Assembly (NCBI RefSeq): GCF_001194135.2
Contig: NC_068984.1
Location: 47,226,571-47,281,468, forward strand
From: Octopus bimaculoides
Lineage: Eukaryota
DNA: 54,898 bases
Reading direction: 5' to 3'
The position numbers and the translations under genes are program-made. Shown piece by piece: positions 5,470 through 45,138 of the stretch (the stretch's first letter is position 1; every line of letters begins with the position of its first letter). A model generated the notes under the pieces. The model had not been told where the DNA came from, did no database searches, and saw only the letters and a list, made by a program, of their open reading frames with translations.

Positions 5470-6990
5470 AATTGCGCAACCTGATAATCGCTACCTGATA
5501 ATCGATATGACTGACAATGAATAAACAAAATATTGCGAATAACGGTGGTAATGAAACCCACCCCTTGATGGTGACAGTGTTACACCCGCCAGGCTCTGAG
5601 ATACTGGTCCGACTCCAGCCTGTTGTTATCCAGCAAGGAACCAGCACATACAGCAAAGATGGAACAAACAACTCAATGCTGTGTTATTCATTGTTACTAC
5701 TTGAGCAACACAATAGATGAAAATGGTGTTCATGGTAGGAGATACCGACAACGTATGTATGATCAATGGAGAGAAAGAGGATTGTTTCACCTCACGGAAC
5801 AGAGATTATGTGATCAAGCTTGAGCAATACGAAAAAAATTGTTGTTTCACAGAAGTAGCGCCTGAAGCTCTCAAAAGACAGGTATTGGAAAACAGCAACA
5901 GAGGAAACGATGAAAATACAGTTCCTACTGATAAAAGTAGCAGACAGCAGAGGTGTAATCTCTAATAAAACACAGGAAAGGAACAGTGATAGCTTGCTCG
6001 ATGAAAGACATATAGATAGTTTGTAAGAAGACAATAAAACTAATGGTGACATGACAGATGGGCAAAAGACAATCAACGACAAAATGAAGGCATGGCTACA
6101 TGAGAACGATAGCGACATTATTTGCAACCATAAAAAGGTTGAGTGGTGGAAACTGAACTAAGAAACGAAAAATGTGAATGAAATTCTGAAATACATCAGA
6201 ACAAAAAACATCACAGAAACAAACAATTTGATCAAAGCCGCAAGTATTGTCATAGAAAATGTGGGTGCTGATGTCAAGAAAAAGAAATATAATTGGAGTG
6301 ACAAAAGAAAAAATCCATAGTGGAAAAAAAAAGGATCCAGGCGGGGTTAGATATGCTCTCGGGGGACATTTCTCTGTTAGATCGAAGAGAAATGGGGGAT
6401 CTTAAAACCGAGCAAAAATACAGGGCACTGAACAGGAAGTATAATATTGAAAGAAAGGGCCTGAAATTGGTAATGGAGGAACTGAAAGAGCGCCTCGTTG
6501 CAAAGAAAACAAAGATAGTAAGATACGACCAAAGAAGGGAGAGGTTATGAAGCAGATAGAAGAGACTTTACAATACCAGTGATTGCAGGAGCAATTGGAA
6601 TGATCAAAAAAGGAACTGAAAATTATTTAAGAATGATCCCTGGCTTACCATCCATGCAGGAAGTGCAAAAGATTGTCTTAACCAGTATGTCACACGTATT
6701 GAGAGGAGCATTGTCATTGTGAATTTTCTTTCCTTTTTCCCCTTTATTTATTTACTTTTCTACTTTTTATTTTTTTCCTTTTTGTCACTGTCTTCCTATT
6801 TTCTCTATCACATGACTCACTAAATCAACTATCTGGTGTGTTTCTTTTAATGGTCTACCAATGTATACAGTACATCTTTCTGCTCTAGCTGTCAGGATGA
6901 CACTCGGCAAGAAATGGAAACAGAATTGAAAGAAGATGCTAATGAAAATAATGATAATAATAATGATAATGATCATGATGATCATGATAA
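5470..6990 (+). mobile_element. R4/Dong-clade non-LTR retrotransposon, internally deleted (N-terminus joined to extreme C-terminus, 3'UTR and tail)
   Basis: N-terminal motifs CYYLS...RYRQRMYDQWRERGLFHLTEQRLCDQA (within ORF 5623-5823) and LNRKYNIERKGLKLVMEELKERLVAKKTKIVRYDQR (within ORF 6320-6550). C-terminus TIPVIAGAIGMIKKG...QEVQKIVLTSMSHVLRGALSL* (6570-6722). (AAT/GAT)n tail at 6946-6990. Confidence 0.85.
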
Positions 6991-6999
6991 ACACTGCAA

Positions 7000-8560
7000 T
7001 ATGAAACAGGAAAGAATTCTAAATCTAAATCTGAAATCTATCACCGTTGGAAGAGAAATATTCCAAGCATATGCCTATAGTGCGCTCTTTATGCTGGCTA
7101 TAACTGATACGTTGACCCAACATGTTAAATCAGACTGGATGTAATACAAAATATTGTAGATTGGCAATGAAGCATTTCTTGACAACGAATAACCTCAATT
7201 TGCATACTGCAATCGAAAACAACTGAAATTACTGTTAAGAACAACACAGACATTAAGAAGTGGAACTGACATGAAACTTGGTTTAGAAAATTGAAGAGGA
7301 AATAATTAAAAATACTAATATCAGTTCGATAAACTAAAACAGAGACAAGAGAATTAGAACAATGATAGACTATCCAATATTCTGGAATTAATGGTGTAGA
7401 CAGATTGCGACAGATACATTTAAAAGAAAGGGTTACGTAGGTTGGGAAGCTGTTTTGGCTTAACATCTTTATCAGAGTGCCAAAAAAGATATTAGCTGTT
7501 CCAGTAATGTGTTATAGTTAAATACTGTCCACTTGAAATTAAGAGAATTTTAATGAATAGATTAATAAAACATCAGCTAAAACTGACAAAGATTATTCTT
7601 ACCTAGAACACAAAGACATGCGAAATATTTTCGTCTAGAAATCTATAAGATCTCAAAATAAAATTAAAGGGAAACAAATAATAATTACTACGAAACATGG
7701 ACAAATAAACTCATCTATTTTTAGTTTTCAAATTTTCCAACAAATATACAACAGAAGGAGAGATCAGTGTAGCTAAGTTAACGAATCATTATCAAAAACT
7801 GATAAAAACCAAAGTAACAACAAAATTGCAAATTCTCATGCTAAGACGTTATTTTGAAAGCATCTATATGAATCAGAAATGAATACATAAACGTCAACAG
7901 TGGTTGAGAAGTGCAAGCCCGTAAGCTAAGACCAAAAGATACATTTAGCGGTTTAAGACAAAGATGTTCACTCCAATATAAAAATAGTGCAAAAAATAAT
8001 TTAAAAATTTGTGGGAGCTGAGAAGAATCTATCAGTTGCATTATTTCGCACTGTTCTGTCTAAACTAAACTAAAGCATGTGTTTAAATGTCGGAGTTCGA
8101 ACTTTCTTGAACTGGAAAGCAACATGTCCGGAGTTAAAACATTTCAGAGAAAGACACGAGCAAGATAAATATATTCTGGTATATAGCGATTGATATTGAC
8201 CATAGGATTAAGTCAAATCTCCCTCATATTGGTCTCAAATACCATCAGAAAAATAAATGCATCCTAATAGTTATATCAATATCAGCAGTCGGCAATACAG
8301 CATTGAGAAAATAGGAAAAAGTAGAGTATAAAAATTTTCAAGAAGTGATGTATGGAAATAGAACTACTAATAAGTGTCCTTTGAAAGATAAAAAATGGAA
8401 AGAAATATAACAGCAACAAACATTGCGAATATAATACCTACTATATTTTTAGTATAATAGAAAACACATAACCAAAAGAAAATATCGTACATATGCATGA
8501 CATTTAGAGCTGGGCTTCCATGTACAACGAAGGCACTCAAAAAGTATTTTCGGATTCTTC
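7000..8560 (+). mobile_element. R4/Dong-clade element, 5'-truncated and heavily decayed (RT C-half plus REL endonuclease)
   Basis: REIFQAYAYSALFMLA resembles RGIFQGDSLSPLLFxLA; TDMKLGLEN resembles DIxMxFGLxKC; LAVPVMCYS is present. DHRIKSNLPHIGLKYHQKNKCILIVISI (~8190-8290) resembles the REL motif NRPDIV...C.LIDVSIP. Many stops and frameshifts. Confidence 0.75.
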
Positions 8561-8659
8561 TAAAATGAGTGCTTTATCTAACAGTCTGCTGCACTCATAC
8601 ATCCACACATAAACACATACATTCTCTCTACTGCACATACATAGACATTCACAGTCTTT

Positions 8660-8756
8660 CTCACGCACACACATAAGCACTCACTCTCTCTCTCGCTCTT
8701 TCTCTTTCTCTCTCTCTTTCTCTTTCTCTCTCTCTTTCTCTATCTCTCTCTCCTTC

Positions 8757-8789
<33 letters not shown>

Positions 8790-8801
8790 TTNNNNNNNNN
8801 N

Positions 8802-8842
<41 letters not shown>
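8660..8842 (+). repeat. Compound (CT)n/(CA)n microsatellite with a 10-N gap
   Basis: Direct read. Confidence 0.95.
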
Positions 8843-8846
<4 letters not shown>

Positions 8847-8937
8847 CAGTACACCAAATAGTTGATTTCATTGACTTCAGTATTCTAACGATTTTAGCAA
8901 TCCATAAATCTTTAGCACAATATAAGCAACAACATGA

Positions 8938-9262
8938 TTATTATTATTGAGTGAGAGAGCAGCGCATGCCATCAAAGTGACACTGGGGTAAAATATACGA
9001 AGCCCATTATACCCATCATGACTACCCGTCTGATAAGGGTACACCAGGCACATGCATCACAATCATATGTGCGCGACATGGTGATCTCATATCAAGATAA
9101 ACACCGCATGACCTTGCAGGTGGGGCCCAGTTAGAATATTTTTTTCGGGTCGAGTGACCCATCCCGCTCCAAAGGTGCCTGAATAAGGATTGTTTAAGGA
9201 TGTTAAGCAAAACACCCATGTTTCCAAAGGTGAATTATTCAAACCCCAAAGAATTCCTCCCA
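8938..9262 (-). mobile_element. SINE-like repeat family D, longer copy
   Basis: Homologous to 627-834; (TAT)n tail at its left end. Confidence 0.8.
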
Positions 9263-9294
9263 TTATTATTATTTCAAATTTTTGCCATAAGGGC

Positions 9295-9380
9295 AGCTTG
9301 AACACAGAACATAAAGACAAGCGAAATGCCGCTAAGCATTCTGCCTGGCGTGTTGAGGATTCTGCCAGTTCACCCCCTTA
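9295..9380 (-). mobile_element. SINE family B head fragment
   Basis: gaaatgccgctaagcattctgcctggcgtgttgaggattctgccagttcacccccttA is the reverse complement of the family head. Confidence 0.7.
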
Positions 9381-9417
9381 AGAATAATGATGATGTTGAT
9401 GAGTACATGCCATTTTC

Positions 9418-10022
9418 TGAGGGAGTGCAATATTTTAGCACAAAAGGAGTATAAGTGCAGACATGATTGTGTAGACAAAAGAGTGCATTGGGATAATAGC
9501 CGAGGGTGTGGCTTCACAACAACAGAAAGGTAATGTGAGCACGAACCAAAAACTGTAATAGAAAATAATACTTACAAGATTTGACTATTGGAGCAAAAAG
9601 ACCAGATATAATTATAGAGGACAAAATAAACAAACAATGTAGGATCATGGATTTGCAATTTCCTTTAACAGTAGAGTCGATATCAAAGAAATTGAAAAGA
9701 AAAATGAGAAATATCAGAATCCATCCAAAGAACTGAGAAGACCAAAGCCGTAATTATTCCTGTAGTGTATTTGAGAAAACATCCAAAATGCTACCTAAAA
9801 GACTGAAAGAGGTTGGAATTGAAATTTGCATTGACTACCTACAGGACAGTACCAACCTACATTCTGCAAGAATACTAAAGAAGATATTTGAGATTTAGTG
9901 AGACTCATTGTCACCAAATCTCAAGACAAAAGTAACTGATAACTGAATTAGCAAGCACTAACAATCATAATAATAATAACAAGAGCAGCAATAACATTGA
10001 CAATAACAAGCGCAATAATAAT
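9418..10022 (+). mobile_element. R4/Dong-clade element 3' end (zinc knuckle plus REL endonuclease, 3'UTR, (AAT)n tail)
   Basis: ECNILAQKEYKCRHDCVDKRVHWD, HEPKTVIENN, GAKRPDIIIEDKINKQCRIMD, HSARILKKIFEI*, followed by an aat-rich tail at 9961-10022. Confidence 0.85.
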
Positions 10023-10409
10023 AGTTTATGATTTGAGTACAAGGCAAATAATTTTAAAAGGAAGTTTTAGTTAACGCTATCGACCCGATTACTAATTAGG
10101 TACTATATTTTTATTACTACTATTCTAACAATACTTTTAATGATAACAACCACGCACGTAGGGCCAGAAACGGGAACAGTCGACCTGAAATGGTAAAGAC
10201 AGGGACAGGGACACCCACATAGAGATAGGCAGTAGAAGGGAGACTACTTTTACAATTCCTAGTGCAACAGGGCCAGGGACAGTAAATGCTAGACATATTA
10301 CCACGGATTCCTTGTTGATAACTGAAATGTAAACAATAGTAGATCTATGGAAACGGAAAGAGTGGATTATCTAATTCTGGTCTCACTAACATTGTAAAGA
10401 AAAAAAAAA

Positions 10410-10810
10410 ACAATAACTGTGGAAAAAATAAAACTTGTCCCTTAAATGCTAAATGTTCGAGCAAAAATTTAGTATACAGATATAGGTGTACATTAGAAGG
10501 AAATTCGCACTTCTGTATTGGTGCATGTTCAACAAACTTCATGACGTGACTGGAAAATCATTTACTTTCATATAAGGAAAGAGAAAGGATGTATAACGCG
10601 AGCCTGAGTGTGTGCATATGACCCTTAAAGATAGAAACATCAACTTTAGTATAGAATAGGAAAAAGCAAGCATAGCTGAATCATATGTAATTGGAGGAAA
10701 AAGATGCAATTTGTTTATAGAGGAAATATTCCATATTTTCACAGCCAAACACCAGTTGCTTAACAATAAACAAGATCAAGCCATAAAGTGTTTGCACCCA
10801 CATAGAAGGG
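10410..10810 (+). mobile_element. Penelope-like element, decayed GIY-YIG endonuclease region
   Basis: NCGKNKTCPLNAKCSSKNLVYR, FCIGACSTNF, LKDRNINFSIE, AESYVIGGKRCNLFIEE, LLNNKQDQAIKCLH match the PLE C-terminal pattern CNC..CPL.GKC...YIG...KRCNLC..EK...LNKR.E...C.H. Confidence 0.8.
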
Positions 10811-11399
10811 CTTTCAAATACTTCCATGGAAGTGACATATAATTTAGTAACCACTCTGTGAAAAGGAGATGCTTATGTTTACGTGGTAAATGTTAGAATA
10901 ATATCTAGTTTGACTTTCAAATAGCAATCACGATTCTCCATAATTTAAATTATCTAAAAATTCTTACCACATATATAGGATGAAGAATCTGCATATAATC
11001 TGAAACTCGATTTATGCAGAGAAAATTTTGAATTGGACTCATAAATATATTCTTCATACCTCTTGTATTTTATTTCATCTGATTTAATAGCCAACAATTG
11101 AACACAATATCAGATCACAAACACATAGTCCACTTAAGACTAGGGCTGAAAAAATACTCGTTGACCTACTTAAAGGTCAAAGATTCTCATTTAGAGTTAC
11201 ACCTTAGGTTGAGTTCAGATCAAACCATATAATAGTTTTCATGACCATATTAAGTTATTAAATCTCCCCACCTCGCATACTTTCTCTCAAAAACTATTGT
11301 AGTCTGTCAAAATAACGTTGGTCAGACATACATAAACTTTTTTGAATCCGTGAACGGACTTTGAATCAAGCTGCATAGAATGCTAACCAGTAGAAAATG

Positions 11400-23336: not shown

Positions 23337-25140
23337 GACTACGGTGCCCAACTGACCCCAGTCATTTGGGCACCGTCTGTGAGTAAAACATCACCATGAC
23401 GCAATTCACTATGCCAGAAATTTGGAAATGACATGCGTCCGACACCATTACGGTAATGTCGTCCGCATATGCAGACACTGCCCTGCTGAGTCCAGTTTCG
23501 AAAGGGAGGCCTCTTAACTCTTTCAACTTCTGCAGCATTGGTTAGAGAGCCAGCACACACAGAAGAGGTGACAGCAGGCAGCCCTGACAGACCGAACGTG
23601 CGATACTTAACGGTTCCAATATGTAGCCATTTTCTTTGACCACCGAGTAGAGGCTGCTGTGCATTGCAGCAATCCAGCCTCTGAAAATAGGTTCGAAATC
23701 AGCCGCTTTAAGAACGGCTTCCAAGTAGCGGTGGTCTATGCTATAGAAAGCTTTCGGCTGATCTAAATTGATCAGGGCCCCACCAAAACCAGTTTTAGTT
23801 CCAGCTCTCTCTACGGTATATCGCTTAAAGTGGCGGTTGTCGTGGATAGGCCTGTTTGGGATTGTGCACGTTTCTGCCTTCGCGACCAGACTACTAACGA
23901 CAAGTGCCAACCTTTTCGCTGATACATTGACCACACTCTTAAGCCCTGTGTTTAGCAGAGTTACGGGCCAGACATTCACTAGCACGTCCCCCTTGTCAGC
24001 GTCCTGTCTCAGCAGTGTTACCACACCCCGCTAACAGCACTAGGAATTCTCCCGTTCTGTAATTGGTTGTTTTTGTGTTTCTGTGATTTCATGCTATTGT
24101 TGATGGCGTTGCTGTTTTTGAAGCTGCTACTCTTGTTCTTGTTGTTTTTGTTGGAGTCGTTGTGAATTGTTTTGCCGTTGTGGTTTCAGAATATGTTTTT
24201 GTTGATTTCTTGGAGTAGGGCTATGTATTCTCCTCCTCTTTCACCTACCCACTTTTGTCACTGTGATCCATTGATCATTCAGCTCTTCTTTCTCCATGTC
24301 ATTGCATTTGATGCTGGTTTGGGGGGTAAAGAATTCAAGAGAAGCTTGCTTTTCCGTGGCAAATGGTAGTAGACCCCTTCTTTGTCTTGGCTTGGGAGTG
24401 GGTGTGAGCGTGGGTGTGGTTGTGAATGTAGGTCTAGGAGTTTTGAACACTTGTTCATGATTTTGGCAGCAGAAGGAGATTATTTTTTGTTGTTTCAGGG
24501 CAGAAAGCCTTTGAGTTACGGTTACATTTTTGGCATCTTGGCTTTCTACCCTTCACTAACACCGACAGGAGAGTACCATCCGGGGGAACGATTAGATGGA
24601 ATAGCTGTCGATATGATCCTGCTTAGATTGTACTTAGTACTTATACCAAGCCAGTTTTGCTTAGGTATTTTCTTGATCTCCAGTATTGTCACTTCGTTTT
24701 CTTTTAGATCTGCTAGGACGGCCGGCACTAACCAAGTGATGGATATTTCTGGTGGCACATTCAACACCCTAATTTTGACAAGACGTCAGCCGCGGTAGCT
24801 GGTGATTAAGAAGCTGTCATTCTTCAAAGTTGTTGCGGAATGACACCTACCTTCTTCTTCCGTGCCAGATCTTACCTCAATAGTTCCAAACTTCTTTCCT
24901 CGGATGATTTGGATCTTTTGTTCCCCCACGCTCCCGAGGCATTTTTGTATTTCGTTCTCAAGAGCATTTTCCACCTGACGAGACTTGACCCCAGTGCAAC
25001 GGAATATTACTGTGCATCTTAAGATGTTCTCTATCACGTCAGATGGTGAGTTTAAAGTTACTCTTCTACCATTCCTTTTTACAATGTTCCTTACCATTTC
25101 AAAATCTTCATATATTTCATAGTTCTCGCCGCAAACGCAA
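23335..25140 (-). mobile_element. L1/Tx1-clade LINE remnant: decayed ORF1 joined directly to mid-RT, APE domain absent, 3' end truncated
   Basis: RT motifs VVTLLRQ...NVWPVTLLN...GGALINLDQPKAFYSIDHRYL...RSVCQGCLLSPLLCVLAL (23542-24024) and VSAYADDITV (~23450-23475). ORF1 segments at 24786-25097 and 24546-24767, with zinc-knuckle remnant RKPRCQKCNRNSKAFCP (~24495-24545). Confidence 0.92.
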
Positions 25141-36659: not shown

Positions 36660-37520
36660 CGGAGTAACATATGAACAGTCGAGAACAAAGGAAGGCTATG
36701 CGCAGTATATCGCAATACGTCTCAGACTAAACAGAAAGGAAAAGAATTTCTATCGGCAAAAAGATACAGATCAGAGCGTATGCTTCCAGACTAAACTGAA
36801 CTTTGTTTAAGAAACAAGGCAAGACATCGGCTTTGGGGGGATGTGCTTCTCAATTCGGATATATCCGAATTATTTTCACTCAGACAGCCTAGTTCAGAAG
36901 CGCTAAAGCGTCCCTCGAAGAACTGAAAATTCCACACTGTTACCGACTTACCTAGACCAGAGTGTGATTCGAGTATAAATCTCAAACATTCCTCAAGAAC
37001 TAGACTTCTAGAGGAATAGTGGAAGGTAGAAGGAGATAGTGGAAGGTAGAAAGCTTTGATGCTACAACTATGGAAACACTAAACACCGCAAGGCTTTCTT
37101 CCCCAAATAACAAAAGGTAACAACAGAAAGAAGGCCTGCACTACTGATAACGGCACAACATTGCAACAATAGGATAGAACCGAAGCATTAGTGTTTGCAG
37201 CACCATCTACAATACTGGAATCAGTACCTACAGCAACAACACCAGCAGTGGAAACAAGAAAAGACAACAACTAAAGAAACACTGCCCTCAAGGGTAACCA
37301 CATCAACAAGAACATCAGTAACTGAAAGCCCCAAACAAAAAGAACAAAGCAAAAGGATGCTGAACCCATAACATGCCCCTCCCGTCCCACTTGGAACAAC
37401 TCAGACATGTCGTGTGTTGAAGAAGACGGTGATGGGCCGAAACGGCAAACATTCGCTAATGGAAGGAAGGAAAAAGAAACAAAACCACACCAACACAAAA
37501 ACTGGAAGATATGAACAAAT
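36660..37520 (+). mobile_element. L1/Tx1-like ORF1 remnant with no ORF2 detected
   Basis: LLPTYLDQSVIRV*ISNIPQEL (~36945-37010) and zinc knuckle VEGRKL*CYNYGNTKHRKAFFP (37039-37104), followed by a T/P-rich low-complexity tail. The layout matches ORF1 at 24060-25097. Confidence 0.75.
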
Positions 37521-41740: not shown

Positions 41741-42477
41741 ATCTAAAATGGTAACGTGTGATTTTATGGTGGGTTAGCTGCTAATTCATGCACACTGAGC
41801 ATCTCGATAAAAGATCCATCATTGGTGCATGAGGAAAATAATAAGGAAAGCAAGAAGTATCACAAATTTCAGCCAAACACAAAAACCTCTTTTCTCCTAC
41901 TTTGGACTCACCTTTCGTAGACATGAGAAATATTTCGTTACGCTAATTATAAAGGTGCGGCGAAAAGTAAACTGACTTCATTTTACAAAGAATTGCATAG
42001 ATTAAACTTATTAGCTGTTTCTGTATCCCCTTGGCATATATTTATGTTGTATCTGTTATGTATAAAATATATATAATACAAATGATTACTTATATTTGCA
42101 TACATATGTTAGCGGACACGTGCCTGGGTGCATGAGGTGAGGATGTGGTTTATAACCGCTTAAGGGACAACTTTCTTACTTGAATGACATTGGCTAGTTG
42201 GCTGTTTATTAAAGTGCTTACTGGCTTAGAATATTCATGAATTTCAAGAAAGCACCAGCGGCATATTTTAAATATTGAAATAAGACTTTGATGATTACTG
42301 CATGATATTTGCAACTAGTGTCGTGGTTGTCATCGTCGTCGTTGTCATCGTCGTCGTTGTCATCGTCGTCGTCGACGTTGTTTATATTAAGGTTATCTGT
42401 GCTCGATTAGCCCTATGATGAGAGGCATTGCTGCCGTGAGATTTTTGTTTATTTTATTGTAATTTTGTTTCATTTAT

Positions 42478-42942
42478 GGGCGATCCTTCGATGCTACTCC
42501 ATTACAACTTCCGTTCGTTGCGCGCACGCATACTGATTACATGATCGTGTAGTGCGTTTGTTTTTCAATGACTTGAAAATATGAAAAGACAACATTAAAT
42601 AGAAACTCAAACCTTCTCCCCCTCAGATGCATACAGTTCTCAAACTTTAAACACATAAACACACTATACGATTATGTAATCAGTATAGGGAGGAGATATG
42701 CCACTGTGGAGGTGCGCTTCACAACGGAGGAGGAAGCAATAAAGCACTCTACAGAGGCATAAGGACAGAGGATCGGGTGCTCTTGCCTTCGTACTGCGGC
42801 AAACGTGTGGCCAAGGTGCGAGTGAGTAAGGTGCCATCCGAACTGAAACTTTAAACACATAAACGCACTATACGATCATGTAATCAGTATGCGTGCGCGC
42901 AACGACCGGAAGTTGTAATGGACTAGTATCGAAGGATCACCC
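42478..42942. mobile_element. MITE-like element with 82-bp TIRs containing a LINE ORF1 fragment
   Basis: TIRs at 42478-42559 / 42861-42942 (gggcgatccttcgat... / ...atcgaaggatcaccc). The insert 42687-42845 is flanked by 45-bp direct repeats 42642-42686 / 42846-42890. Confidence 0.9.
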
Positions 42943-43074
42943 AATTATGTACTGTCAGACAAAAAGTATGAGACGATGTTATTTAATATCTTTACCTGTT
43001 ACAAAACAGTAGCGTGTGATACGAAGAAGTAGTTGTTACCTCAAGCAGTCGAGTGACCAAGACTCCACTGGGTT

Positions 43075-43635
43075 TTGGCAGCATTGTTAGCACGTCGGTC
43101 GAATACCATGCAATAGTTTCTCTTGCTCTTTAACATTCAGGTTTCAAATCTTGCCGAAGTCAACTTTACCTTTCATTCTTTTGGGATTAGATAAAATAAT
43201 GAACGATCTAAGAACTGGGACCAATGGCATCGACTAGCCTTTTCTACTGTAAAGTGTGGTCGTTCTGCTCAGGAGAGAGAAACCATTGATATTACTAACA
43301 TTATTACTACTAGTAGCAGAAAGGCGGCGAGCTGGCAGAATCGTTAGCATGCTGGGCGAAATGCTTGGTGGTATTTCGTCTGTCTTTACGATTTTTTTTT
43401 TTTAGTTCAAGCACCGCCGAGGTCGACTTTGTTTTTCATCCTTTCGGGGTCGATGAATTAAGTATCAGTTGCGTACTGCGTACGAGAAATCGACTATCCC
43501 ACTCCTCCAAATTTCAAGCTTTGTACCTAGAGTAAAAAGAAGTATTATTGGAAGCAGTTAGGCAGTGAGCTTGCAGAATCGTAACCACGCTAGATAAAAT
43601 GTTGAGCAACATTTCTTCTGTTGTTATGTTCTGAA
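43075..43635 (+). mobile_element. Three consecutive SINE family B copies (43075-43290, 43320-43545, 43560-43635)
   Basis: Heads tggcagcattgttagcacg, aaggcggcgagctggcagaatcg and aggcagtgagcttgcagaatcg; the third runs into a gap. Confidence 0.85.
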
Positions 43636-43954
43636 NNNNNNNNNNNNNNNNNNNNNNNNNNNNNNNNNNNNNNNNNNNNNNNNNNNNNNNNNNNNNNNNN
43701 NNNNNNNNNNNNNNNNNNNNNNNNNNNNNNNNNNNNNNNNNNNNNNNNNNNNNNNNNNNNNNNNNNNNNNNNNNNNNNNNNNNNNNNNNNNNNNNNNNNN
43801 NNNNNNNNNNNNNNNCTGGTTAAGGTCTAGCAACTGACCAGCAAATAAAACACGCTATCTGCGGTATTAAGCAGAATATTTGTTGTAGCCCATCATGTAC
43901 GCCAAGGTAAAACATGTTAACACTTCCAATCAGTTAAGAGCAGGAGCCATGTGA

Positions 43955-44240: not shown

Positions 44241-44288
44241 AAAGTTCGTCGTCGTCGTTGTCGTTGTTGTTGTTGTTGTTGTTGTTGA

Positions 44289-44565: not shown

Positions 44566-45138
44566 CTCTTTTACTCTTTTACATTTTTACTTGTTTCAGT
44601 CATTTGACTGCGGCCNNNNNNNNNNNNNNNNNNNNNNNNNNNNNNNNNNNNNNNNNNNNNNNNNNNNNNNNNNNNNNNNNNNNNNNNNNNNNNNNNNNNN
44701 NNNNNNNNNNNNNNNNNNNNNNNNNNNNNNNNNNNNNNNNNNNNNNNNNNNNNNNNNNNNNNNNNNNNNNNNNNNNNNNNNNNNNNNNNNNNNNNNNNNN
44801 NNNNNNNNNNNNNNNNNNNNNNNNNNNNNNNNNNNNNNNNNNNNNNNNNNNNNNNNNNNNNNNNNNNNNNNNNNNNNNNNNNNNNNNNNNNNNNNNNNNN
44901 NNNNNNNNNNNNNNNNNNNNNNNNNNNNNNNNNNNNNNNNNNNATATATATATATATATATACATACATATATACGACGGACTTCTTTCAGAGTCTGTCT
45001 ACCAAATCCACTCACAAGCCTTTGGTCGGCTCGAGGCTATACTAGAAGACACTTGCCCAAGTTGCCACGCGGTAGGACTGAACCCAGAACCATGTGGTTG
45101 GTAAGCAAGCTACTTACCACACAGCGACTCCTGCGCCT
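44566..45138 (-). mobile_element. SINE family A with internal microsatellite and gap
   Basis: Matches 1478-1939 on both sides of the gap. Confidence 0.9.

What the first reader, a model, noticed from the sequence alone, without database searches (positions are those of the whole stretch)
42478..42942. MITE enclosing a retrotransposon ORF1 fragment between 45-bp direct repeats of its own TIR region
Seen: 82-bp TIRs, and a 159-bp GC-richer insert (42687-42845) flanked by 45-bp direct repeats (2 mismatches) that overlap the right TIR. The insert reads RRYATVEVRFTTEEEAIKHSTEA/(L)RTEDRVLLPSYCGKRVAKVRVSKVPSE with one frameshift. It aligns by eye with KKFGTIEVRSGTEEEGRCHSATTLKNDSFLITSYRG*RLVKIRVLNVPPE of the Tx1-like ORF1. 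An internal ORF1 piece with no 3' tail and a 45-bp duplication is not ordinary TPRT. Inference: this is templated capture during break or gap repair of a DNA transposon, a possible route for MITE-borne LINE fragments and hairpin-linked anti-LINE small RNAs.
Basis: partly seen in the sequence, partly recalled or inferred. Interest (0 to 1): 0.7.

Follow-up and report, generated by a model that had tools for sequence, protein, structure and literature searches.

The report
Octopus MITE carrying a LINE ORF1 fragment
A small hairpin-ended DNA transposon relic in an octopus genome has picked up a 156-159-bp piece of a LINE retrotransposon's ORF1 gene, most likely by a copying error during DNA repair or replication. 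This is a clean example of a known process, not a new one.

Summary
There are 83-nt terminal inverted repeats (94% complementary). A 45-nt direct repeat (2 mismatches; 48 nt with 3) brackets a GC-richer insert of 156-159 bp. The insert reads as 53 codons of a LINE ORF1 with one missing base.

The ORF1 origin is now solid. The insert is 82% identical in DNA to an ORF1 gene of Octopus bimaculoides, and 26 of the 37 differences fall at third codon positions. Relatives of that ORF1 sit directly upstream of an ORF2 with endonuclease and reverse-transcriptase domains.

A second filled copy exists. UniProt A0A0L8FN65_OCTBM is a gene model that reads through the same MITE interior, both identical junctions and an unbroken insert. 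So there was one capture, and the filled element was copied afterwards.

The best explanation is templated (filler-DNA) capture by two template switches, with re-entry 45 nt upstream. This is the known gap-filling/FoSTeS route of Pack-TIR elements.

Not supported: the hairpin small-RNA idea, because the insert lies in the loop and not in the stem. Not established: the Tx1 clade, the target-site duplication, any empty copy, the exact donor, and whether the second copy is a paralogue or an orthologue.

Verdict: a new member of a known kind, of modest interest.

The parts
42472..42477 (.). Candidate left target-site duplication, ATTTAT
   Evidence: Matches AATTAT at 42943-42948 in 5 of 6 positions. 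It is the best of all lengths from 2 to 10. Chance is about 2% from random position pairs in the window, and higher in AT-rich DNA. Inconclusive.
42477..42559 (.). Left terminal inverted repeat (83 nt; 82 nt if the T at 42477 belongs to the flank)
   Evidence: 94% complementary to 42861-42943. It forms the stem of the predicted hairpin.
42560..42641 (.). AT-rich interior (loop) of the element, not duplicated
   Evidence: 32% GC over 42560-42656. Translated in frame, it forms the N-terminal part of the gene model P0001 in the other copy.
42642..42686 (.). Direct repeat copy 1 (45 nt; 48 nt if 42639-42641 'CTC' is counted)
   Evidence: Its last 30 nt (42657-42686) are a second copy of the inner end of the right TIR, 90% complementary to 42530-42559. 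It carries a G>A change (AACACACTA against the TIR's AACGCACTA) that the other filled copy shares.
42687..42845 (+). Captured LINE ORF1 fragment: 53 codons in sense on the + strand, with one base missing between 42758 and 42759
   Evidence: 92% aa identity to P0001. 77% aa identity to P0002, a LINE ORF1 of O. bimaculoides, E 4.8e-18 against 1.8 billion proteins. 82% nt identity to L001 10214-10341, E 5e-31. Codon-position differences are 7/4/26. The last 3 nt (CTG) could come from either the donor or the host element.
42846..42890 (.). Direct repeat copy 2 (45 nt)
   Evidence: 2 mismatches to 42642-42686. It continues without a break into the rest of the right TIR.
42861..42943 (.). Right terminal inverted repeat (83 nt)
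42943..42948 (.). Candidate right target-site duplication, AATTAT
   Evidence: Inconclusive.

Best explanation
A 263-bp non-autonomous TIR element (83-nt arms, about 97-nt loop) in an octopus genome acquired 156-159 bp from the coding region of an active LINE ORF1 in a single templated-insertion event. A growing DNA strand copying the element left its template 30 nt into the right TIR (after 42686). It copied about 53 codons of a LINE ORF1 elsewhere, then returned to the element 45 nt upstream of where it had left. This leaves the foreign piece bracketed by a 45-nt duplication of host-element sequence. The setting was either synthesis-dependent repair of a break or excision gap, or a stalled fork at the hairpin-prone repeat (FoSTeS/MMBIR type). 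The sequence does not distinguish these. The filled element was then copied at least once, by transposition or by another kind of duplication. Both known copies are now decaying relics, and the window copy carries a frameshift. Shown: the anatomy, the ORF1 origin, a single origin for the two filled copies, and the absence of TPRT hallmarks. Inferred: template switching as the mechanism, the trigger, and the way the element was copied.
For: The anatomy is confirmed. The whole insert, from its first to its last codon, is homologous to the most conserved block of a large octopus ORF1 family. All 78 non-self hits of P0001 match only its residues about 28-91, best stretches mostly 34-90, and none matches the MITE-coded residues before about 28 (alignment). 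That family is a genuine LINE ORF1. In O. vulgaris (L003) and O. sinensis (L002) it lies just upstream of an ORF2; the L003 ORF2 has Exo_endo_phos + RVT_1 + zf-RVT domains. Its AlphaFold model (pLDDT above 90 over the core) matches tandem-RRM proteins, and a CCHC knuckle follows. Insert against L001 ORF1: 37 differences, 26 of them at third codon positions. So the source was a LINE lineage under coding selection, and little neutral decay has followed. Neither insert end carries a LINE 3' end or an A-run. P0001 encodes MITE interior, then DR1, then the insert, and stops in DR2, with both junctions identical to the window (VISI|GRRY and PSEL|KL*) and the same derived A in DR1. This points to one capture event that was later copied. 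The window's DR1 'T' (GATTATG) is private to the window, so the two repeats differed by at most 1 of 45 nt in the common ancestor. Short imperfect microhomology is visible at the right junction, 'CT..AA' shared by the MITE (CTCAAAC) and the donor lineage (CTAGAAG). This is in the range reported for Pack-TIRs, median 2 bp (PMC8277862). Capture of unrelated 'stuffer' DNA by template switching during SDSA is an established explanation for such elements (PMC3814204, citing Rubin and Levy 1997).
Against: No empty copy of the element was found, so the 263-bp precursor is a reconstruction from this copy's own repeat. The true donor (over 95% identity) was not found; the nearest relative is 82% identical, so junction microhomology cannot be read exactly, and the left junction looks blunt. 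DNA of the second copy was not retrievable. Its TIRs and flanks are unknown, and it could be the orthologous locus of a sister species rather than a paralogue. The window's species is inferred only from its gap-rich pattern, which resembles the O. bimaculoides locus. The TSD is ambiguous. No further copy turned up in about 62 kb of other octopus DNA.
Confidence: 0.6

Rival explanations
1. RNA-templated patch: a break inside the element was repaired with LINE RNA as template, or by capture of a partial LINE cDNA, through the LINE's own reverse transcriptase. This would be endonuclease-independent, internally primed retrotransposition or RT-mediated break repair.
For: The donor is a LINE coding region that was under selection and therefore probably expressed. 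Intact, tandemly arranged copies of related LINEs exist in octopus genomes. The fragment is short, in sense orientation and intron-free, which is compatible with an RNA origin. From general knowledge, LINE RTs readily switch templates.
Against: Nothing in the sequence requires RNA: there is no A-tail and no 3'-end bias. A 45-nt duplication of the target is not typical of endonuclease-independent insertions, which usually come with deletions. A DNA-templated switch explains the same anatomy with known precedent (PMC8277862).
Confidence: 0.15
2. Composite element: two copies of the same MITE inserted about 160 bp apart in a LINE ORF1. Deletions removed the inner ends of both, and the outer TIRs then mobilised the pair together with the ORF1 remnant between them.
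For: The left part (L-TIR to 42686) and the right part (42843/42846 to R-TIR) can each be read as a truncated copy of the same element. Macrotransposition from the outer ends of neighbouring elements is known in general.
Against: It needs two insertions, two deletions and a mobilisation, against one event with two switches. The two 'copies' overlap by 45 nt and differed by at most 1 nt in the ancestor of both filled copies, as expected for one template copied twice. The flanks outside the TIRs show no ORF1 similarity.
Confidence: 0.1
3. Selected function: the filled element is kept because it yields anti-LINE small RNAs, or a short ORF1-derived peptide (the 91-aa open frame of P0001) that interferes with LINE particles.
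For: One copy keeps an open 91-codon frame from an ATG in the MITE loop to a stop in DR2. The captured block is the most conserved part of ORF1.
Against: The window copy is frameshifted. 53 stop-free codons occur by chance about 8% of the time ((61/64)^53). The piece covers the last three elements of RRM1 (beta3-alpha2-beta4) plus the first strand of RRM2, so it is not a folding unit. It lies in the hairpin loop, not the stem, with no inverted partner. It is only 82% identical to the nearest LINE found.
Confidence: 0.04
4. Assembly artefact: the junctions are chimeric joins in a gap-rich short-read assembly.
For: The window has 17 runs of N, so the assembly is fragmentary.
Against: 42200-43200 contains no N; the nearest gap is at 43636. 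An independent, non-identical copy (about 93% aa identity over 90 residues) has the same two junctions.
Confidence: 0.03

Closest known systems
Pack-TIR elements of animals (Tan et al. 2021, PMC8277862) and the plant Pack-MULE / Pack-TYPE elements they extend
   Same: A TIR transposon whose interior holds a duplicated piece of a sequence that also exists elsewhere in the genome. Breakpoints lie inside the element rather than at its termini, with short or no microhomology. The proposed origin is gap filling or fork-stalling template switching. Multicopy cases are explained by later transposition.
   Different: Pack-TIRs are defined by capture of non-TE (host gene) sequence, whereas here the captured piece comes from another transposon. 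In the parts of that paper read here (sections 8-9), a 45-nt duplication of host-element sequence on both sides of the insert is not described as a feature. Here only two copies are known, and no empty element or orthologous empty site could be examined.
Filler ('stuffer') DNA from abortive gap repair in Ac/Ds, P, Mutator and mariner derivatives (Rubin and Levy 1997, as summarised in PMC3814204)
   Same: An internal rearrangement of a cut-and-paste element in which unrelated genomic DNA is copied in by template switching during synthesis-dependent repair.
   Different: Those products usually combine filler with an internal deletion. Here nothing is lost and 45 nt are gained, which means the strand re-entered upstream of its exit point, or two overlapping nascent ends failed to anneal.
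FoSTeS/MMBIR templated insertions (cited in PMC8277862 and PMC3814204)
   Same: An insertion of remote sequence flanked by a duplication of local sequence, at a structure-prone (long inverted repeat) site.
   Different: That mechanism is inferred mainly from human structural variants. No replication or breakpoint-population data exist here to support it over SDSA.
5'-truncated LINE insertion by target-primed reverse transcription
   Same: LINE-derived DNA flanked by a direct duplication of the target.
   Different: There is no LINE 3' end or tail. The fragment is internal to ORF1, and the duplication (45 nt) is much longer than usual. Tested here and not met.

Membership tests
MITE (miniature non-autonomous TIR DNA transposon) | Terminal inverted repeats at both ends | tested here: met
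   83-nt arms, 94% complementary.
MITE (miniature non-autonomous TIR DNA transposon) | Small size and no transposase coding capacity | tested here: met
   467 bp filled and 263 bp without the insert and one repeat copy. ORFs confined to the element's own sequence (outside the insert) are at most 41 aa.
MITE (miniature non-autonomous TIR DNA transposon) | Target-site duplication of a superfamily-specific length next to the TIRs | tested here: inconclusive
   The best candidate is 6 bp, ATTTAT/AATTAT, matching 5 of 6, with about 2% or more by chance. There is no TA, TTAA, TWA or 8-bp match.
MITE (miniature non-autonomous TIR DNA transposon) | Many copies at unrelated loci sharing the termini | tested here: inconclusive
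   One copy in the window. One more is known only through protein model P0001, which covers the interior, DR1, the insert and the start of DR2. None in about 62 kb of three octopus genomes or in JGI metagenomes. Whole octopus assemblies could not be searched.
Pack-TIR / transduplicating TIR element | Foreign sequence lying between the TIRs of a recognisable TIR element, with a parental sequence elsewhere in the genome | tested here: met
   The insert is 82% nt identical to a LINE ORF1 on O. bimaculoides chromosome CM046615.1. That ORF1 extends beyond both insert ends. The exact donor was not found.
Pack-TIR / transduplicating TIR element | Captured sequence is non-TE host DNA (definition used in PMC8277862) | tested here: not met
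   The captured piece is LINE ORF1. So this element works like a Pack-TIR but falls outside that operational definition.
Pack-TIR / transduplicating TIR element | Microhomology at breakpoints | tested here: inconclusive
   Right junction: imperfect 'CT..AA'. Left junction: apparently blunt. Judged against an 82%-identical relative, not the true donor.
LINE ORF1 protein with RRM and CCHC domains (source of the insert) | Significant sequence homology to ORF1 proteins | tested here: met
   79 proteins at E <= 1e-3; P0002 at 4.8e-18 and 77% identity. Window ORF1 remnant at E 1.5e-10.
LINE ORF1 protein with RRM and CCHC domains (source of the insert) | Encoded directly upstream of an endonuclease + reverse transcriptase ORF2 on the same strand | tested here: met
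   L003 has ORF1 at 9908-11026 and ORF2 at 11753-14734, repeated in tandem; the upstream ORF2 copy (6058-9456) has Exo_endo_phos, RVT_1 and zf-RVT. L002 has the same ORF1-then-ORF2 order (its ORF2 pieces were not scanned with Pfam). In the window, an RVT_1 fragment lies downstream of the 24.9-kb ORF1 remnant.
LINE ORF1 protein with RRM and CCHC domains (source of the insert) | RRM fold(s) followed by a CCHC zinc knuckle | tested here: met
   AlphaFold model of P0041: mean pLDDT 76.6, core above 90. Foldseek top hits are tandem-RRM proteins (SFPQ/NONO, IMP3 RRM12, Prp24), E 2.5e-5 to 1e-3. zf-CCHC Pfam hit in P0022. The insert maps to beta3-alpha2-beta4 of RRM1 plus beta1 of RRM2.
Tx1 clade of LINEs | Placement of the reverse transcriptase within the Tx1 clade by phylogeny | not tested
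   No reference RT set was available. The architecture (endonuclease + RT + zf-RVT, RRM/CCHC ORF1) excludes the REL-endonuclease clades (R2, R4/Dong, Hero) and fits L1/Tx1, which is reported as active in O. vulgaris (PMC13282606). That is compatibility, not a test.
Ordinary TPRT insertion of a LINE | Insert ends with the LINE 3' end or tail at one junction | tested here: not met
   Both ends fall inside ORF1 codons, with no A-run or microsatellite at either junction.
Hairpin-RNA (endo-siRNA) locus directed against a LINE | LINE-derived sequence present in both arms of an inverted repeat, so that the dsRNA carries it | tested here: not met
   The insert is in the loop of the predicted hairpin. 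No inverted or direct second copy of it occurs in the window.
Hairpin-RNA (endo-siRNA) locus directed against a LINE | Small RNAs mapping to the insert | not testable with these tools
   No read data were available.

The most novel reading that the evidence does not exclude
A break provoked by the element's own 83-nt hairpin was patched with LINE RNA by the LINE's reverse transcriptase. The resulting chimeric MITE stayed mobile, so MITEs could scatter LINE coding sequence into transcribed regions, where it could feed piRNA or siRNA surveillance of that LINE, or express a truncated ORF1 peptide. This would be a retrotransposon-to-DNA-transposon sequence transfer with a defensive by-product in a cephalopod germline.
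Probability: 0.06. Interest if true: 0.6.

Novelty: new member of a known kind. Interest (0 to 1): 0.3.

Why it matters
It is a well-resolved natural example of templated sequence capture inside a TIR transposon in a mollusc. Both breakpoints are readable to within a few bases, the 45-nt re-copy fixes the geometry of the two template switches, and there is evidence that the product was propagated.

It shows that the Pack-TIR route also moves pieces of other transposons, which screens restricted to host-gene captures would miss by their own definition.

In practice, it shows that at least one annotated O. bimaculoides 'protein' (A0A0L8FN65) is a read-through of this chimera. It does not reveal a new mechanism, and there is no sign of function.

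Tried and rejected
- **More copies or empty copies of the element.** None in the window or in L001-L004, about 62 kb from three octopus species. None in JGI metagenome contigs with an exact 25-mer of the TIR, as expected for non-host data.
- **Antisense ORF.** A protein search with the 62-aa antisense ORF that spans both junctions found nothing.
- **Six-frame 'bag' query of the reconstructed empty element.** It returned nothing, but it failed its built-in positive control. P0001 should have scored E 4.7e-10, as shown locally, so this negative is uninformative.
- **Published sequence.** A full-text search for TIR k-mers in papers gave no hits. The O. vulgaris repeat paper holds no library in its text supplement.
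- **DNA of the P0001 locus.** Not on record. Most O. bimaculoides hits are 2015-annotation UniRef entries without contigs, so harvesting more O. bimaculoides DNA this way was not feasible.
- **Pfam on the ORF1 block.** No family matched; the fold was obtained by modelling instead.
- **Rfam, tRNA and tandem-repeat scans.** Nothing relevant in or next to the element.
- **Rejected readings.** TPRT insertion (no 3' end or tail). A tandem 45-bp duplication followed by an insertion exactly at its joint (two coincident events). A MITE inserted into a LINE (LINE sequence is inside the TIRs, not outside).

Full report
**1. What is in the sequence**

The region 42477-42943 is a 467-bp element. Its boundaries are inverted repeats of 83 nt (42477-42559 and 42861-42943), 94% complementary with 5 mismatches.

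Inside it, a direct repeat brackets a GC-richer segment. The repeat is 48 nt with 3 mismatches as extended by the tool (42639-42686 / 42843-42890). The second repeat copy runs straight into the right arm, so its last 30 nt are the inner end of that arm. The first copy is therefore an extra, internal copy of that inner end; one search reports it as a 30-nt inverted match to 42530-42559.

GC content is 55% in the insert, 41% in the rest of the element and 35-40% in the flanks. As single-stranded DNA the element folds into one long hairpin whose stem is the two arms (-124.6 kcal/mol; shuffles -52.1 +/- 4.3; z = -17). The insert lies in the loop. None of this is chance: blastn E-values within the window are 1e-31 for the arms and 2e-15 for the direct repeat. 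The stretch contains no N; the nearest gap begins at 43636.

**2. The insert is a piece of a LINE ORF1**

Joined, they match the decayed ORF1 at 24899-24744(-) at 45% over 53 residues (E 1.5e-10). They also match two further remnants at 36919-37002(+) and 14230-14382(+).

A search of the 5.8-billion-protein index returned one hit, P0001. This is UniRef A0A0L8FN65_OCTBM, Octopus bimaculoides, 91 aa, 92% identical over the whole query.

An exhaustive phmmer search with P0001 against 1.84 billion representatives gave 79 proteins at E <= 1e-3. Every hit other than P0001 itself matches only the insert-encoded part of P0001 (best stretches mostly residues 34-90). None matches the residues before about 28. 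Those sampled are octopus proteins or unnamed Logan contigs. The best is P0002 (XP_052829386.1, O. bimaculoides), 77% identical, E 4.8e-18.

The locus encoding P0002 (L001, chromosome CM046615.1) aligns to the insert at 82% nucleotide identity over 128 nt (E 5e-31). It shows that the window lacks one base after GAGGC, between 42758 and 42759. In L001 the reading frame continues on both sides of the captured block, so the insert is an internal fragment.

Across all 53 codons there are 37 differences, distributed 7/4/26 over codon positions 1/2/3. Most of the divergence therefore arose while both lineages were protein-coding and under selection. The insert has decayed little since capture.

The family is a real LINE ORF1:
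- In O. vulgaris (L003) the ORF1 (P0041) lies about 700 nt upstream of an ORF2, in head-to-tail repeated units. A 1132-aa copy of that ORF2 has Exo_endo_phos, RVT_1 and zf-RVT domains.
- O. sinensis (L002) has the same ORF1-then-ORF2 layout.
- In the window, an RVT_1 fragment follows the 24.9-kb remnant.
- Pfam does not recognise the ORF1 block itself.
- An AlphaFold model of P0041, built on a 25-sequence alignment, is confident over residues 70-290.
- The model's best PDB matches are tandem-RRM proteins (SFPQ/NONO, IMP3 RRM12, Prp24; E 2.5e-5 to 1e-3). A CCHC knuckle follows (Pfam hit in P0022).

The captured 53 residues correspond to P0041 145-197. That is beta3-alpha2-beta4 of the first RRM plus the first strand of the second. 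This is the most conserved block of the family, but it is not a self-contained domain.

'Tx1-like' was not tested. The architecture excludes the REL-endonuclease clades and fits L1/Tx1, a group reported as recently active in O. vulgaris (PMC13282606). No RT phylogeny was made.

**3. A second filled copy with the same junctions**

P0001 is a gene model that reads through another copy of this chimera; it is not a LINE protein. Aligned to the window:
- Residues 2-60 cover 42583-42759 (95% identity): MITE loop, direct-repeat copy 1 and the first half of the insert.
- Residues 61-91 cover 42759-42851 in the next frame (90% identity): the rest of the insert, ending ELKL-stop inside direct-repeat copy 2.

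Both junctions (VISI|GRRY and PSEL|KL*) are identical in the two copies. Both copies also carry A where both TIR arms and repeat copy 2 have G (AACACACTA against AACGCACTA). The window's other repeat mismatch (GATTATG) is private to the window.

So the capture happened once, the two repeats differed by at most one base in the common ancestor, and the filled element was then copied.

The two copies differ at about 6 of 90 residues plus indels. That is too much for alleles, so they are different loci or orthologues in different species. The DNA of the P0001 locus is not retrievable. The window's gap-rich pattern resembles the O. bimaculoides locus and not the O. sinensis one. This favours a paralogue but does not prove it.

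**4. How it most likely arose**

The insert has no LINE 3' end, tail or microsatellite at either junction, and both of its ends fall within ORF1 codons. An ordinary target-primed insertion is therefore excluded.

The simplest account of foreign DNA flanked by a 45-nt duplication of the host element is one event with two template switches. A nascent strand copying the element left after 42686, copied about 158 nt of ORF1, and re-entered 45 nt upstream of its exit. The equivalent alternative is that two nascent ends, overlapping by 45 nt, were bridged by filler.

This is the abortive gap-repair or filler-DNA route (PMC3814204, citing Rubin and Levy 1997). It is also the gap-filling and FoSTeST routes proposed for animal Pack-TIRs, where breakpoints are internal and microhomology has a median of 2 bp (PMC8277862, sections 8-9).

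Against the 82%-identical relative, the right junction shows an imperfect 'CT..AA' overlap between MITE CTCAAAC and donor-lineage CTAGAAG. The left junction looks blunt. The true donor is needed for an exact reading.

The sequence cannot say whether the trigger was excision, a break within the hairpin-prone element or a stalled fork. It also cannot say whether the template was DNA or LINE RNA. I give 0.6 to DNA-templated switching followed by copying, 0.15 to an RT- or RNA-templated patch, and 0.1 to a composite of two truncated MITEs around a LINE remnant. The composite needs four events plus a mobilisation, and the near-identity of the overlapping 45 nt argues against it. Function and artefact get a few per cent each.

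**5. What is not supported**

The proposed link to hairpin-derived anti-LINE small RNAs does not fit the geometry. The dsRNA stem would consist of TIR sequence, the ORF1 piece is in the loop, and no inverted copy of it exists in the window.

Nothing indicates selection. The window copy is frameshifted, 53 stop-free codons occur by chance about 8% of the time ((61/64)^53), and the fragment is not a folding unit.

Membership in 'MITE' is only partly shown. TIRs, size and lack of coding capacity are met. The TSD is ambiguous (6 bp, 5 of 6, about 2% or more by chance). Copy number is known only as at least 2. No empty copy or autonomous partner was found. One of these negative searches failed its positive control and should be disregarded.

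**6. Comparison, novelty, verdict**

The element works like a Pack-TIR or filler-DNA derivative. It differs in two ways. First, the captured sequence is itself a transposon fragment, which places it outside the operational Pack-TIR definition. Second, the capture added a 45-nt duplication instead of a deletion.

It is a new member of a known kind: a clean, well-documented case, useful as an example and as a warning for annotation, but not surprising to a transposon specialist. Interest 0.3.

Noticed in passing
protein P0001 (UniRef A0A0L8FN65_OCTBM), aligned to window 42583-42851: This annotated 'uncharacterized protein' of O. bimaculoides is a read-through of MITE loop, direct repeat and LINE ORF1 fragment. 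It is a gene-model artefact, not a host gene.
   Followed up: yes
window 24744-24899(-), with an RT fragment at about 23300-23700(-); also 36919-37002(+) and 14230-14382(+): Three decayed LINE ORF1 remnants of the same protein family (45%, 46% and 29% aa identity to the insert), full of stops. None resembles the insert at the DNA level, so none is the donor. The first is followed by an RVT_1 fragment only about 1.2 kb downstream, which implies an internal deletion or the loss of the endonuclease region.
   Followed up: partly
window 42320-42388: A 15-bp tandem repeat (GTCGTCGTTGTCATC, 3.5 copies at 97%) lies 90 bp upstream of the element. A related GTCGTTGTT array is at 44251-44287.
   Followed up: no
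L003 6058-19297 (O. vulgaris OX597840.1): At least three head-to-tail LINE units with apparently intact ORF1 and ORF2. Each ORF1 frame opens with a long lysine (A-rich) run. Tandem arrays like this suggest insertion into the element's own tail, or site specificity.
   Followed up: no
L001 8477-10657 (O. bimaculoides CM046615.1): The C-terminal half of an ORF1 (NWWG...CCHC region, 8477-9030) lies upstream of an N-terminal half (10001-10400). The order is rearranged, or these are two truncated copies. RefSeq model XP_052829386.1 (P0002) joins the N-terminal half to a short downstream exon.
   Followed up: no
proteins P0076 (MetaClust UPI0006955EDA) and P0012 (A0A0L8I7X9_OCTBM): Gene models that fuse this LINE ORF1 block to apparently unrelated host-looking sequence. 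In P0076 it is joined to a zinc-metalloprotease-like HExxH region with cysteine-rich repeats; in P0012 it is joined to a long unrelated C-terminal region. These are either annotation chimeras or exonised LINE fragments.
   Followed up: no
The word-indexed protein search with a 440-aa query made of short peptides joined by X linkers missed P0001, which local phmmer scores at E 4.7e-10. Concatenated queries of this kind appear to defeat candidate selection in that tool.
   Followed up: yes
window, 17 runs of N (10 to 709 nt), for example 43636-43815 and 44616-44943: Gap density and variable gap lengths resemble the O. bimaculoides chromosome-level assembly locus (L001) and not the O. sinensis locus. 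This is the only evidence for the window's species.
   Followed up: partly
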